64,000 nt of DNA. It comes from Anaeramoeba ignava BMAN (taxonomy: Eukaryota > Protista > Anaeramoebae). The translations under genes and the position numbers were made by a program. Under the pieces are notes generated by a model, which was given only the letters and a program-made list of their open reading frames with translations, was not told the DNA's origin and ran no database searches. Location of the stretch: NCBI GenBank assembly GCA_028826165.1, contig JAPDFW010000075.1, forward strand, positions 310,001 through 374,000. The letters are read 5' to 3'. Below, piece after piece: positions 3,771 through 10,502 of this stretch. Position 1 is the first letter of the stretch. The number at the start of each line of letters is the position of its first letter.

Positions 3771-3905
3771 TATGAAAAAGAAAAAAATGAAAAAAATGAA
3801 AAAAAAAGAAAAAAAAATTGGAGAAAAATAAAATTGAGAAAAAAAAAAAGTTGGAAAAAATAATTTTTTCATTTTTCTTTTTGAATTTTTTTTTTGAGTT
3901 AACAA

Positions 3906-4118
3906 ATGGATTATCAATATGAATCTTGTCCTATTTGTAGGAATCTTTTGGAAGATGTTTGTCTTGAATGTACGGAAAACAACAAAACAGAAAATTGTCG
4001 AGTTGTTATTGGAAAATGTGGACATCCTTTTCATGAACATTGCATGAATCAATGGCTTGTGTCTCGTTCTTTTTGTCCGTTATGTAATGAAAATTGGGAA
4101 GTTGATCATTATAAATGA
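3906..4118 (+). CDS. Rbx1/Rbx2/Apc11-family RING-H2 protein, lacking the N-terminal cullin-binding strand
   Basis: CPICRN..EDVCLEC...C....GKCGHPFHEHCMNQWL....CPLCN..W follows the Rbx-family pattern. The protein is 70 aa. Confidence 0.85.
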   Translation: MDYQYESCPICRNLLEDVCLECTENNKTENCRVVIGKCGHPFHEHCMNQWLVSRSFCPLCNENWEVDHYK

Positions 4119-4239
4119 AGATTCAAAAGAAAAGAAAAGAAAAAAAAATTTTTTTTTAATTCAGTTCAACTTAATTCAATTTTTTTTCAATTCAATTTTG
4201 ATTTCTTAATTAAACCCGTTTTAAATTCGTTCTAACTTT

Positions 4240-5748
4240 TTTAATTAAATTTGTTTTAAATTTATTAATTAAATTTGTTTTAAATTTGTTTTAAATTTGT
4301 TTTAAATTTATTAATTAAATTTGTTTTAAATTTATTAATTAAATTTGTTTTAAATTTATTAATTAAATTTATTTTAAATTTATTAATTAAATTTGTTTTA
4401 AATTTATTAATTAAATTTGTTTTAAATTTCTTAATTAAATTTGTTAATTAAATTTATTTTAAATTTATTAATTAAATTTGTTTTAAATTTATTAATTAAA
4501 TTTGTTTTAAATTTATTAATTAAATTTGTTTTAAATTTGTTTTAAATTTATTAATTAAATTTGTTTTAAATTTGTTTTAAATTTATTAATTAAATTTGTT
4601 TTAAATTTGTTTTAAATTTATTAATTAAATTTGTTTTAAATTTATTAATTAAATTTGTTTTAAATTTATTAATTAAATTTGTTTTAAATTTATTAATTAA
4701 ATTTGTTTTAAATTTCTTAATTAAATTTATTAATTAAATTTATTAATTAAATTTGTTTTAAATTTATTAATTAAATTTATTTTAAATTTCTTAATTAAAT
4801 TTATTAATTGAATTTATTCCACTTTTTAATTAAATTTGTTTTTAAATTTCTTAATTGAATTTGTTTTAAATTTATTAATTAAATTTATTTTAAATTTGTT
4901 AATTAAATTTGTTTTAAATTTGTTTTAAATTTGTTTTAAATTTATTCCACTTTTTTTAATTAAATTTATTTTAAATTTATTAATTAAATTTGTTTTAAAT
5001 TTGTTTTAAATTTATTTTAAATTTATTAATTAAATTTATTCCACTTTTTTTAATTAAATTTGTTTTAAATTTATTAATTAAATTTGTTTTAAATTTATTA
5101 ATTAAATTTGTTTTTAAATTTGTTTTAAATTTGTTTTAGATTTATTAATTAAATTTGTTTTAAATTTGTTCCACTTTTTTTAATTGAATTTGTTTTAAAT
5201 TTATTAATTAAATTTGTTTTAAATTTATTAATTAAATTTGTTTTAAATTTATTAATTAAATTTATTAATTAAATTTATTAATTAAATTTGTTCCACTTTT
5301 TTTAATTGAATTTGTTTTAAATTTATTAATTGAATTTGTTTTAAATTTATTAATTGAATTTGTTTTAAATTTATTAATTAAATTTGTTTTAGATTTATTA
5401 CTTAAATTTGTTTTAAATTTATTAATTAAATTTGTTCCACTTTTATTAATTGAATTTGTTTTAAATTTCTTAATTAAATTTGTTTTAAATTTATTAATTA
5501 AATTTGTTTTAAATTTATTAATTAAATTTGTTTTAAATTTTTTAATTAAATTTATTTTAAATTTGTTCCACTTTTTTTAATTGAATTTGTTTTAAATTTA
5601 TTAATTAAATTTGTTTTAAATTTATTAATTAAATTTATTAATTAAATTTATTCCACTTTTTTTAATTAAATTTGTTTTAAATTTTTTAATTAAATTTGTT
5701 TTAGATTTTTTAATTAAATTTGTTTTAAATTTTTTAATTAAATTTATT
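4240..5748. repeat. AT satellite (TTAATTAAATTTGTTTTAAATTTA)n with interspersed TTCCACTTTT; resumes at 6853-6975
   Basis: Visible. The same unit lies on both sides of the 5753-6848 insertion. Confidence 0.9.
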
Positions 5749-5752
5749 TTAA

Positions 5753-6848
5753 GGGGCGAGTTTGAAAATCAAAAAAAACAACAAAAAAAATTTTTCGCTA
5801 AGAAAATTTTTTTTTCACAAATACTCCTGATACTCGCTCTTCTTTCTCAATAAAGATTGATTGAAAAAAAAATTTGTTTTTTTGTTATTTATTATTATGT
5901 TCTTATTGATTTTTTTGATTAAAATAATCTTGTTTTTTTTTGCTCTTCTTCTTTTCTCTTTTTTCTTCCTCTCTTTCAATTTTTTTTTTTAATTCTTCTT
6001 CTAAAGGAAGGTTTAATGCCTCGAGCATATCAGGAATATATGAGAATCCTCGATTCCATTTTAAGACTGAAACCCTATTTGAAGGTTATAATATTTCCAA
6101 AAATTACCAGCTTTAAGCGCGAATTTGTTAATCAAACGATTGAAGCTCTCATTAAACGTTGTTGTATATTAATGCACGATCTTTTTGCCAATTGATTGAA
6201 TGAATTCTCCTAATTTCACTTGTAAGAACTTTTGGGGCGATTGACGAACTGAGTTTGGAGAGAGATTTGACTTTTCCTGTTTCTCTTTTTCCTCATTGAG
6301 AAGGTTTTTTTTTCTTTTGGGTACATTTCAAATTCGATCTCCATTGCCAATTCCGTGTGTGAAGAATTTTTTTTTTGGTTTTTCTCATTTTTGATCAAAT
6401 CAATTGATTTTTCCCTTTTTGTGATCTTTTGGAAGATCTTTTTTCTTCCTTTTTTCTTTTCATCTTCAATTAGTTCATTCATTTTTTTTCCTTATAAATT
6501 TTTATTTGATTTGATTTGATGAATATTTATGAGATATTTCTGTTTCAAACAGAAAAATTTTAAAATAATTAACAGAAAAAAAAATTTTTCTTTTCTTATT
6601 GATCACACTTATATCCGATCGGATATGAGTCAGAAAAAAAAAAATACTTTCACAGTTCGATTTTGATAACATGCAGTGCATAGTGGAAATTTATTTTTAT
6701 ATTTCTTGAATTGAGAACTCTTCATTGAACCACAAAAAAAGCATTTAGTTCGTTTTATCGAGAACATTTGAAAAAAAATAAGAATGACAATGAAAATGAT
6801 AATTAAAATTTTATCTTTTATTTTTTTTTGTTAAACTAAACTCCAGCC
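5753..6848 (-). mobile_element. Internally deleted Kolobok-type DNA transposon with TTAA target-site duplication
   Basis: TTAA at 5749-5752 and 6849-6852. Termini GG...CC with imperfect TIRs (GGGGCGAGTTT / GGCTGGAGTTT on the opposite strand, each followed by CAAAAAAAA). Removing the element restores the satellite. Minus-strand relic KKIVH*YTTTFNESFNRLINKFALKAGNFWKYY...VLKWNRG fits the Kolobok (PF20700-like) T..xESFx...K..K...F..Y.......L.WN region. Confidence 0.8.
5790..6767 (-). pseudogene. Degenerate transposase gene: GATA-like zinc-finger exon (6767-6648), intron (6647-6540), K-rich segment, C-terminal DDE-region relic
   Basis: Exon 1 is MFSIKRTKCFFCGSMKSSQFKKYKNKFPLCTACYQNRTVK. The GTATTT...AAACAG intron joins it in frame to ORF 6482-6216 with one intervening TAA. 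Further stops and frameshifts lie downstream. Confidence 0.7.
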
Positions 6849-7087
6849 TTAAATTTATTAATTAAATTTGTTCCACTTTTTTTAATTAAATTTGTTCCAC
6901 TTTTTTTAATTGAATTTGTTTTGAATTTATTAATTAAATTTATTTTAAATTTGTTTTAAATTTGTTTTAGATTTTTTTTATTAGTTTTGTTTTTCTTTCG
7001 TTTTGTAAAAAAAAAAGAAGAAGAAGAAAAAGAAAAAGAAGAAGAAAGAAAGAAAGAAAAGAAAGAAAGAAAAGAAAGAAAGAAAAA

Positions 7088-10000
7088 TCAAATATTTCTT
7101 TGTTTAGTAGAAGATTTCTGAATTTCCTTATTAATCAAATGACTAGTTGATTCAATCAAAGAAGAAAGAGTATTAATTTGAGTTGACCATTCTTGGATAA
7201 TTTGAGTAGGTTCTTTTTTCTTAATAAAAGAAACATTGCCAAGCAAACGGTCAATTTTTGCAAATACTGTTTTTGAAGAGACAAGATCTGCCAAATGACG
7301 CTCGGCTTCATCAGTGTTCAAACACAATAATTCGCCAAGTCTTTTAAGTGTGATTCGTGAATAATATTTCTCAATAATTCTGATATTATGCTGAATTAAT
7401 CGCAGACGCAGTGTTTCCCATTCCTTGCCTTTTTCGCCTTCTTTGAAAATGGGATGATGAAGTAATTCTTCTGCGAATTTTTGGGTCAGCAATTGCCAAT
7501 CACAAATTTCATCGGTTAAAAATGATTTGAGTAAATTTTTCAAAGAAATTCCTTCCAAGTTATTTTTCTCCTGATAAATCCGATTTGCAATGTCAAATTG
7601 CTCAACGGAATGGGGGGATAAAATGGCATATATTATCATGTAACTGATTGCTGCTTTCCATTTTTGATCGTCTTTTTGGACGATCTCAGTGTTGTAAATA
7701 TCGTAAAATGCTCGGCAATTTTCAAGGTAATTATGATAATGTGAGTAGTATTCAGACATCAATTCGTAGAAGCGGATCTTGAGCTCCTGAATTGTGTCAT
7801 CTTCTAGTGATTTGCGAGTGATTTTTCTTGATATTATCATTGCTTTTGGGAAATCATTAATTTTCAAGCACAATCTAATTTGCTCCAAAATAAACTCGAT
7901 TTTTTCCTTTTTGGTCATTGCTCCAAATGTCTCGACTTGAAGATCTTGAAGCATCTCAGCTGCCTCTTCAACGTTTCCTTCTTCCTCCTTGATTTTTGCA
8001 TAGATCAGAGTCACAGTGGCTCGTTCAACTTCAACGTGAATTTTTCCTTCAGTTACTGTTCTTAATGTTTGAATTAATTCTATTTTTGTCTCTTTATCTG
8101 GTGTTCGATCTATTAAATTAATTGCTGCTTGGCATATTTTTTGTACTACTACTTTGCTTTGACTCCGTTTTTTGGATAGTATTTGTAGATTCTCGTTAAG
8201 TAACTTCCAGTTCTTTGTTAAATAAGATAACTCAATGATTTCAAGTGCTATTCTTGATGTTGCTGTTGCTTGCTCAGCCTATTCACATTAATTTTATTTA
8301 TTTAGAATTTAATTTATTTAGAAATTTATAATTTAATTTATTTTTAATTTATAATTTTATTTATAATTTTATTTATAATTTAATTTATAATTTTATTTAT
8401 AATTTTATTTATAATTTCATTTATAATTTTATTTATATTTTTATTTATAATTTAATTTATAATTTAATTTATAATTTTATTTATAATTTTATTTATAATT
8501 TTATTTATATTTTTATTTATTTAGAAATTTATAATTTAATTTATAATTTAATTTATAATTTAATTTATAATTTAATTTATAATTTAATTTATAATTTTAT
8601 TTATAATTTAATTTATAATTTTATTTATAATTTTATTTATAATTTTATTTATAATTTAATTTATAATTTTATTTATAATTTAATTTATAATTTTATTTAT
8701 AATTTAATTTATAATTTTATTTATAATTTTATTTATAATTTTATTTATAATTTAATTTATAATTTAATTTATAATTTAATTTATAATTTAATTTATAATT
8801 TTATTTATAATTTTATTTATAATTTTATTTATAATTTAATTTATAATTTAATTTATAATTTTATTTATAATTTTATTTATAATTTTATTTATAATTTAAT
8901 TTATTATTTTATTTATAATTTTATTTATAATTTAATTTATAATTTTATTTATAATTTAATTTATAATTTTATTTATAATTTATTTATAATTTTATTTATA
9001 ATTTAATTTATTATTTAATTTATAATTTTTATTTATAATTTAATTTATAATTTAATTTATAATTTAATTTATAATTTAATTTATAATTTAATTTATAATT
9101 TAATTTATAATTTTATTTATAATTTTAATTTATAATTTTATTTATAATTTAATTTTATTTATAATTTAATTTATAATTTTATTTATAATTTAATTTATAA
9201 TTTTATTTATAATTTTATTTATAATTTTAATTTATAATTTTATTTATAATTTTATTTATAATTTTATTTATAATTTAATAATTTATATTTTTATTTATAA
9301 TTTTATTTATAATTTTATTTATTATTTAATTTATAATTTTATTTTTATTTTTATTTTATTTTATTTATAATTTTATTTATAATTTTATTTATAATTTTAA
9401 TTTATAATTTTATTTATAATTTTTATTTATAATTTTAATTTATAATTTTAATTTTTATTTAATTTATAATTTTAATTTATAATTTTATTTATAATTTAAT
9501 TTATAATTTTAATTTATAATTTTAATTTATAATTTAATTTTATTTATAATTTTATTTATAATTTAATTTATAATTTTATTTATAATTTTAATTTATAATT
9601 TTTATTTATAATTTTATTTATAATTTAATTTTATAATTTAATTTATAATTTTTATTTATAATTTTTATTTATAATTTTATTTATAATTTTATTTATAATT
9701 TTATTTATAATTTAATTTATTATTTTATTTATAATTTTATTTATAATTTTATTTATAATTTTATAATTTATATTTATAATTTTATTTTATAATTTTATTT
9801 ATAATTTAATTTATAATTTTATAATTTATAATTTTTATTTATAATTTAATTTATAATTTTATTTATAATTTTATTTATATTTTTATTTATAATTTTTATT
9901 TATAATTTTATTTTATATTTTTATTTATAATTTAATTTATAATTTTATTTATAATTTTATTTATAATTTTATAATTTAATTTTATAATTTTATTTATAAT

Positions 10001-10502
10001 TTGATTTATAATTTTATTTATAATTTTATTTATAATTTTATTTATAATTTAATTTATAATTTTATTTATAATTTTAATTTATAATTTATTTATAATTTTA
10101 TTTATAATTTTATTTATAATTTTATTTATAATTTTATAATTTTATTTATAATTTTATTTATAATTTTATTTATAATTTAATTTATAATTTAATTTATAAT
10201 TTTATTTATAATTTTATTTATAATTTTATTTATAATTTTATTTATAATTTTATTTATAATTTAATTTATAATTTTATTTATAATTTAATTTATTATTTTA
10301 TTTATAATTTTATTTATAATTTTATTTATAATTTTATTTATATTTTAATTTATAATTTTATTTATAATTTTATTTATACAAGTCTTGATTGTTTTTCAAG
10401 TGCAAAAAGTCCATCTAAAGCAATTGAAAGATTTCCTTGTTTTAAAGCTAAATCTCTAAAATTTGGTATTTCTTGGTCACAAATTTTTTCATAATCAGTC
10501 AT
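7088..10502 (-). CDS. RPN5: 26S proteasome lid subunit Rpn5/PSMD12 (exons 10502-10380, 8278-7088)
   Basis: LFALEKQSRL|AEQ...SKKRSQSK...EGKIHVEVERATVT...LQDLQVETFGAM..KEKIEFILEQIRL...HNIRIIEKYYSRITLKRL (PCI domain). GT-AG intron at 10379-8279. Confidence 0.95.
8300..10377. repeat. Intronic ~12-bp A/T satellite (TTTATAATTTTA/TTTATAATTTAA)n
   Basis: Fills almost all of the 2.1-kb Rpn5 intron. Confidence 0.92.

What the first reader, a model, noticed from the sequence alone, without database searches (positions are those of the whole stretch)
5749..6852. Kolobok-type transposon carrying a spliced GATA-type zinc finger instead of the usual THAP domain
Seen in sequence: a 1096-bp insert bounded by TTAA|GG...CC|TTAA with imperfect TIRs, whose removal restores the host satellite. 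About 80 bp inside one end is an exon (6767-6648, absent from the ORF track) encoding CFFC-x17-CTAC (SSQF..PLCTACY, cf. GATA TPxWR..LCNAC). A GT-AG intron joins it in frame (one TAA) to a K-rich segment, followed by relic TTTFNESFNRLINKFALK..NFWKYY...LKWN. Established: Kolobok elements make TTAA TSDs, have RR..YY ends and a DDE transposase with this ESF-type third acidic motif, and are typically associated with THAP fingers. Inference: this is an internal-deletion derivative of a family whose transposase uses a GATA finger as its DNA-binding module. I do not know of this architecture having been described. Such a family could also spread GATA domains around the genome.
Basis: partly seen in the sequence, partly recalled or inferred. 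Interest (0 to 1): 0.85.

Follow-up and report, generated by a model that had tools for sequence, protein, structure and literature searches.

The report
Broken Kolobok transposon with GATA-like finger
A 1.1-kb broken jumping gene in the amoeba Anaeramoeba ignava recently copied itself into two places, one inside a peptidase gene, and begins with a small zinc finger resembling those of GATA gene regulators; no intact parent was found to show that the finger really aims the jumping enzyme.

Summary
The element is real. It spans window 5753-6848 between TTAA duplications, with GG...CC ends. A second copy with the same ends interrupts an otherwise intact 802-aa acylaminoacyl-peptidase-like ORF; the scan had already noted that copy (s1-698223, probably s1-698247). 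The genome is Anaeramoeba ignava. The 3' relic (about 6310-5906) is the C-terminal part of a Kolobok/PF20700-type transposase, including the catalytic-Glu motif (44 bits, 0 of 2000 shuffles). Both Asp motifs and D/CxxH are gone, so it is non-autonomous and must be moved in trans. The 5' exon encodes a true C-x2-C-x17-C-x2-C finger (chance 6/20,000). Its best matches are GATA fingers, but weakly: PF00320 E=0.0028, below the cut-off, with the signature Trp and Asn replaced. The link from finger to transposase is not shown. The intron has no RNA support, needs a stop or a frameshift whichever acceptor is used, and no full-length copy or relative with this finger was found. 'Instead of THAP' is overstated, since the protist relatives have no THAP match either. 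Verdict: a new variant of a known kind; a GATA-finger transposase is a roughly even-odds lead.

The parts
5749..5752 (.). TTAA target-site duplication (3' end of the element in coding orientation)
   Evidence: sequence; the same TSD flanks copy C58
5753..5763 (.). terminal inverted repeat GGGGCGAGTTT
   Evidence: fits the GGnnnnAGT end seen in other Anaeramoeba TTAA elements
5906..6085 (-). transposase C-terminal tail (VSVLKWN..LEALNL..K/E-rich), 1 nt out of frame with the Glu segment
   Evidence: 26.5 bits against a profile of 30 relatives, 0/2000 shuffles; alignment A2
6064..6309 (-). transposase segment with the third catalytic residue (KIVH-stop-YTTTFNESFN..K..NFWKYY); TAA at 6171-6169
   Evidence: 44 bits, 0/2000 shuffles; tblastn E=1e-7 with P0026; found genome-wide with P0001 at E=0.006
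6219..6491 (-). K-rich open frame (ATG at 6482); the deletion breakpoint lies in or just after it; not assignable to any domain
   Evidence: no significant match to the D1-D2 core profile or to Pfam
6540..6647 (-). putative GT-AG intron (alternative acceptor at 6491); contains the 16-nt palindrome ATATCCGATCGGATAT
   Evidence: sequence only; no splice joint
6648..6767 (-). exon 1: 40 aa with a C-x2-C-x17-C-x2-C GATA-like treble-clef finger
   Evidence: PF00320 E=0.0028, 17.7 bits, cut-off 26.8; gap-free to GATA3/GATA1 at E=0.23-0.45; chance 6/20,000
6838..6848 (.). terminal inverted repeat (GGCTGGAGTTT on the minus strand), 5' end in coding orientation
6849..6852 (.). TTAA target-site duplication
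4221..6993 (.). host 24-bp AT satellite that received the insertion, between a RING-H2 gene (3903-4118, +) and an Rpn5-like gene (ends 7091, -)
   Evidence: gene names read from the sequence, not searched

Best explanation
A non-autonomous, internally deleted Kolobok-superfamily DNA transposon of Anaeramoeba ignava. Shown: TTAA duplication, GG..CC ends, two dispersed copies, a decayed transposase C-terminus with the catalytic Glu, and loss of both Asp motifs and D/CxxH. Inferred: it moves by cut-and-paste using a transposase supplied in trans, either from an unassembled parent or from another Kolobok family of this genome whose ends share GGnnnnAGT. It jumped recently, already broken, into a satellite and into a peptidase exon. 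Inferred with less certainty: in the parent, the first exon gave the transposase an N-terminal GATA-like treble-clef zinc finger that binds subterminal DNA, in the slot THAP fills in animal Kolobok. The confidence given is for this whole reading; the Kolobok-relic part alone is about 0.95.
For: Ends, TSD and second copy. Removing copy C58 restores an 803-codon frame with one terminal stop, and read contigs cross both of its junctions. Relic scores 44 and 26.5 bits against relatives. Those relatives hit PF20700 (11 of 30, best 1.5e-21), and two from A. flamelloides sit in TTAA|GG..CC|TTAA elements. The finger lies on the same strand as the relic, starts 81 bp inside the 5' end, and is followed by a host-like GT donor. 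GATA is the top family in Pfam, PDB sequences and, among named clusters, the Atlas. Other relatives carry different N-terminal Cys-rich fingers (P0017, P0035), so this slot varies.
Against: No full-length copy: only four exact termini in the genome, and only two hits for either protein piece. No homologue of exon 1 in protein, metagenome or viral collections. None of 33 transposase relatives has this finger. Joining exon 1 to the rest needs one lesion with either acceptor. No splice joint was seen, and one contig reads through the intron unspliced. Beyond the cysteines, likeness to 17 host GATA fingers is modest (27-66 of 2000 shuffles score as well).
Confidence: 0.5

Rival explanations
1. Same Kolobok relic, but the finger is a separate cargo or mini-gene (a captured, diverged host GATA exon or a short upstream ORF) that was never part of the transposase protein.
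For: With the acceptor at 6491, whose upstream 50 nt are 16% GC like host introns, exon 1 splices to three residues and a TGA that overlaps the ATG at 6482. The host has an 11-member GATA subfamily ending WRK-x5-YCNAC that loosely resembles the finger. Other A. ignava transposons are reported by earlier readers to carry extra domains (unchecked notes).
Against: Identity to any host finger is only 20-34%, so a recent capture is excluded. One extra A in the 8-A run at 6489-6482 would put exon 1 in frame with the K-rich segment. The position at the extreme 5' end matches a transposase N-terminus.
Confidence: 0.22
2. The finger does belong to the transposase but is not GATA by descent. It is a shortened version of the variable Cys4 fingers of protist Kolobok N-termini, or of the zinc ribbon that precedes the core, and resembles GATA only through spacing.
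For: Score under the PF00320 cut-off, with DUF7685 close behind (16.1 versus 17.7 bits) and LIM domains next in PDB. Trp to Phe, Thr-Pro to Ser-Gln and Asn to Thr changes at signature positions. P0002 has a C-x2-C-x18-C-x2-C ribbon. The top Atlas hits are unnamed or DUF4428.
Against: Exon 1 scores no better than shuffles against the pre-core ribbons (529 of 1000, five sequences only). It sits at residue 9, not about 90 aa before the first Asp. It keeps CG-T/S-x-S/T, the aromatic-basic-basic and LC-x-AC pattern of GATA without gaps.
Confidence: 0.23
3. The shortness and lesions are assembly errors, and a complete active element exists at this place.
For: The assembly is nanopore-based and polished with Racon, Nanopolish and Pilon (10.1101/2023.03.03.530753). 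Copy C58 shows 35 gaps and few substitutions, typical of unpolished consensus.
Against: Run X1 holds all 119 sampled 31-mers of the window copy and X2 holds 97% (both may be the assembly's own sample), so the window version exists in short reads. Two loci show the same overall deletion.
Confidence: 0.05

Closest known systems
Kolobok superfamily of DNA transposons (PMC9587614; PMC6004289)
   Same: TTAA TSD, 5'-RR..YY-3' ends, DDE-type transposase C-terminus with the ESFN Glu motif
   Different: Only the Glu segment survives; the N-terminal finger is Cys4 with 17-residue spacing rather than the C2CH THAP of animal families; no KolX, nuclease or helicase ORF
PF20700 Mutator-like transposases of Anaeramoeba and other protists (P0001, P0002, P0004, P0026 and others)
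   Same: KIxH-x-Y-x-T-x2-ES[FL]N-x7-K-x3-NF-x-K-x-Y region and the LxWN tail; ends of type GGnnnnAGT
   Different: None of 33 has this N-terminal finger; the relic pieces alone do not hit PF20700
GATA zinc finger (PF00320; GATA1/GATA3, AreA; host A. ignava GATA factors)
   Same: C-x2-C-x17-C-x2-C spacing, gap-free alignment, a model built on a GATA alignment superposes at about 1.2 A
   Different: Below cut-off; W to F, TP to SQ, N to T; short basic tail; sits in a transposon
Transposase zinc-finger DNA-binding domains BED, WRKY-GCM1 and THAP (PMC1702500)
   Same: A zinc-chelating domain shared between transposases and transcription factors
   Different: GATA is not among the transposase domains listed in the passages of that paper that I read

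Membership tests
Kolobok superfamily | TTAA target-site duplication | tested here: met
   both copies; removal restores the satellite and an 803-codon ORF
Kolobok superfamily | termini 5'-RR and YY-3' (not piggyBac CC..GG) | tested here: met
   GG...CC; definition in PMC9587614
Kolobok superfamily | transposase homologous to Kolobok/PF20700 around the catalytic Glu | tested here: met
   44 and 26.5 bits against relatives, 0/2000 shuffles; relatives hit PF20700; Repbase itself was not available
Kolobok superfamily (autonomous element) | complete DDE triad with C/DxxH and the H2CH finger | tested here: not met
   no first or second Asp motif, DxxH or HxxGxHxxC in the coding frames; hence non-autonomous
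Kolobok superfamily (animal type) | N-terminal THAP domain (C2CH, PWF, AVPTIF) | tested here: not met
   no THAP in the element or in 30 scanned alignment members
GATA zinc finger PF00320 | C-x2-C-x17/18-C-x2-C spacing | tested here: met
GATA zinc finger PF00320 | score above the curated cut-off of 26.8 bits | tested here: not met
   17.7 bits; 20.3 bits for the C58 reading
GATA zinc finger PF00320 | T-P-x-W-R-R/K and C-N-A-C signature residues | tested here: not met
   S-S-Q-F-K-K and C-T-A-C
GATA zinc finger PF00320 | treble-clef fold | tested here: inconclusive
   the single-sequence model is uninformative; the model on a GATA alignment matches AreA/GATA at rmsd 1.2 A but is circular
GATA zinc finger PF00320 | binds WGATAR DNA | not testable with these tools
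   WGATAR words lie 33 and 52 bp from the 5' end, unremarkable in AT-rich DNA
GATA-finger transposase (proposed) | finger and DDE core in one open frame or spliced mRNA | tested here: inconclusive
   no full-length copy and no splice joint

The most novel reading that the evidence does not exclude
A Kolobok family whose transposase used a GATA-derived treble-clef finger as its N-terminal DNA-binding domain, adding GATA to the list of domains exchanged between transcription factors and transposases.
Probability: 0.4. Interest if true: 0.6.

Novelty: new variant of a known kind. Interest (0 to 1): 0.42.

Why it matters
BED, THAP and WRKY-GCM1 fingers are shared between transposases and transcription factors (PMC1702500). 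I found no paper in the searchable library describing a GATA finger on a transposase; that library lacks most subscription journals and Repbase Reports. If a full-length parent confirms the fusion, it would be a new DNA-binding module for Kolobok and a case of traffic between a transcription-factor domain and a transposon in a deep-branching protist. Even without that, the element shows recent Kolobok activity in A. ignava, including an insertion into a single-copy peptidase gene. As it stands the evidence is one decayed family with two copies.

Tried and rejected
Searches for a full-length parent all failed: whole-element DNA, exon 1 and relic proteins, terminus patterns, and PF20700 and profile searches, which found 12 or more other Kolobok-type loci. 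A genome-wide Cys4 codon pattern was too noisy and was cut at 100 of 416 rows; it showed none beside the Kolobok loci on C1, C13, C35 or C37. Exon 1 homologues: none among short proteins (limited to 36-115 aa), exact look-up (51), metagenomes (62) or viral contigs (63). The relic pattern found nothing in metagenomes. The profile search of the protein database was swamped by low-complexity words (45). The idea that the K-rich segment is the D1-D2 linker (SSxME) was rejected as not significant (101). PiggyBac was rejected by its ends, and Sola3 (also TTAA, from memory) by the PF20700-type homology. A second, empty APEH locus is not in the assembly (92), and no simple unit deletion explains the repeat variant seen in runs X3 and X4 (95). 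The T. vaginalis Kolobok paper is not held.

Full report
1. The observation. The inverted repeats are short and imperfect (8 of the first 11 bases). Removing the insert and one TTAA gives a junction that differs by 3 of 48 bases from another stretch of the 24-bp satellite. The satellite lies between two convergent host genes. A protein from this assembly is named Anaeramoeba ignava; the assembly has 42.8 Mb in 147 contigs.

2. A second copy fixes the boundaries. G000:C58:342246-343188 has the same two ends and TTAA on both sides. It interrupts a short coding repeat in an acylaminoacyl-peptidase-like gene (named from its sequence motifs). Taking it out restores 803 codons with a single terminal stop, and the gene has no second locus in the assembly. 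Contigs from short-read runs cross both junctions, and one 1870-nt contig runs from the gene 377 bp into the element. The two copies differ by one substitution over the first 393 columns, and that contig carries the window's base there. After that, C58 shows 35 gaps and few substitutions. Because the assembly is polished nanopore (10.1101/2023.03.03.530753) and run X1 holds every sampled word of the window copy, I read the C58 gaps as mostly consensus error and the copies as nearly identical. That is inference. Earlier readers of this scan noted the C58 copy (s1-698223, and probably s1-698247).

3. The relic is a Kolobok-type transposase end. The relic pieces alone do not hit Pfam, so I went through relatives. 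PF20700 finds another transposase in the genome (C37, protein P0001). P0001 finds the window relic genome-wide at E=0.006 and 32 relatives among 1.8 billion proteins, 11 of which hit PF20700 in a 30-row scan. A profile of the relatives' Glu region, built without window sequence, scores 6288-6064 at 44 bits and 6085-5906 at 26.5 bits, with 0 of 2000 shuffles reaching either. Pairwise matches reach back to about 6310, weakly 6363. Two A. flamelloides relatives sit in TTAA|GG..CC|TTAA elements, and the Anaeramoeba ends compared share GGnnnnAGT, one with an extra base. PMC9587614 defines Kolobok by TTAA duplications and RR..YY ends, so the filing holds. The first and second Asp motifs, D/CxxH and the H2CH finger are absent. 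The remaining frame has a TAA at 6171-6169, a TGA at 6330-6328 and a 1-nt frameshift near 6075. The K-rich segment 6491-6219 matches nothing significantly.

4. The finger. Exon 6767-6648 encodes C-x2-C-x17-C-x2-C; such a stop-free pattern appeared in 6 of 20,000 simulated elements. GATA is the nearest named family in three libraries, always weakly: PF00320 E=0.0028 at 17.7 bits against a cut-off of 26.8, with DUF7685 at 16.1; GATA3 and GATA1 gap-free at E=0.23-0.45, then LIM domains; and a mixed GATA cluster at 0.83 among named Atlas clusters. With the cysteines held fixed, 27 to 66 of 2000 shuffles score as well against 17 host GATA fingers. The signature Trp is Phe, Thr-Pro is Ser-Gln, and the Asn of CNAC is Thr. 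From my knowledge of GATA-DNA structures that Asn contacts bases, so canonical WGATAR specificity is doubtful. A model built on a GATA alignment fits AreA at 1.2 A, but this is circular; the single-sequence model was uninformative. 'GATA-like treble clef' is as far as the evidence goes.

5. The link between finger and transposase is the weak step. The donor at 6647 looks like host donors. A second acceptor at 6491 follows 50 nt of 16% GC, typical of host introns; it gives three residues and a stop that overlaps the ATG at 6482, or an open frame if the 8-A run once had 9. No joint with GT..AG ends appeared in four runs, none of them recorded as RNA. The contig of run X4 that enters the element reads through the intron. 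It begins 6 nt before the peptidase ATG, so X4 may be RNA, but that is not on record. Only four exact termini exist in the assembly. No homologue of exon 1 turned up anywhere, and none of the 33 relatives has this finger. Some have other N-terminal Cys-rich fingers or a zinc ribbon before the core. The joined exon model was not searched; each exon was searched by reference.

6. How it most likely works. Shown: a deleted, decayed element with intact ends at two loci. Inferred: cut-and-paste into TTAA by a transposase acting in trans, from an unassembled parent or from one of the 12 or more other Kolobok-type loci. Both assembled copies lack the core and share the TAA at 6494-6492, so the last jump happened after the element was broken. 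Inferred at about even odds: the parent's first exon supplied an N-terminal GATA-like DNA-binding finger. The rivals are a separate cargo or upstream mini-gene (0.22), a non-GATA Cys4 finger of the transposase (0.23), and assembly error (0.05).

7. Against what is known. Animal Kolobok transposases usually have THAP, H2CH and DDE (PMC6004289). The protist relatives here show no THAP match, so the element did not obviously swap THAP for GATA. BED, WRKY-GCM1 and THAP are the zinc domains listed as shared between transposases and transcription factors in PMC1702500. I found no paper pairing GATA with a transposase, within a library that lacks Repbase Reports and most subscription journals. There is no sign that the element spread GATA domains: the other 18 GATA loci are host genes far from any Kolobok match.

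8. Verdict. Observation confirmed, interpretation partly supported. New variant of a known kind, interest 0.42. The GATA-finger transposase reading has probability about 0.4 and would deserve about 0.6.

Noticed in passing
L058:2254-5609 (G000:C58): A single-copy acylaminoacyl-peptidase-like gene is interrupted by the second copy. Runs X3 and X4 carry a different version of the 27-bp coding repeat just downstream (7 differences), and junction contigs are at about half the flank depth in X1: a hint of a second, possibly empty allele, unresolved.
   Followed up: partly
window 6610-6625: Perfect 16-nt palindrome ATATCCGATCGGATAT, holding two inverted GATA words, inside the putative intron of both copies.
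   Followed up: no
L043-L053 (11 loci): Expanded host GATA subfamily with an atypical first knuckle, C-S/A/T-N-P-x-C, and a 16-residue loop (TPxWRK-x5-YCNAC).
   Followed up: partly
L056:3800-5420 (C37) and C77:181728-183071: Two near-identical copies of another Kolobok-type transposase with all three acidic motifs; NCBI names it 'protein networked 3a-related'. The C37 3' end is CCC|TTAA; the 5' end was not found.
   Followed up: partly
L057:3414-4865 (C122): A further Kolobok-type transposase with a pre-core zinc ribbon, downstream of a long (GATAAT)n-like repeat.
   Followed up: no
L067 (C126:763447-764434), L086 (C3:31255-32024), C114:49647-50548: Three more short TTAA|GG..CC|TTAA non-autonomous elements of 0.77-0.99 kb with perfect terminal matches; no Cys4 exon in the two that were read.
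   Followed up: partly
L091:2560-10782 (A. flamelloides): An 8.2-kb TTAA element with a perfect 20-bp TIR and internal part-copies of the terminus at 3961 and 9585, apparently nested or composite.
   Followed up: no
L056:275-667 and 2234-2590: Near the C37 element: a MULE-like fragment (LFIDGTFK) that also carries a DGRFDS motif, and a USP-like His-box fragment.
   Followed up: no
window 8279-10376: A 2.1-kb intron made almost wholly of a 12-bp satellite in an Rpn5-like proteasome gene.
   Followed up: no
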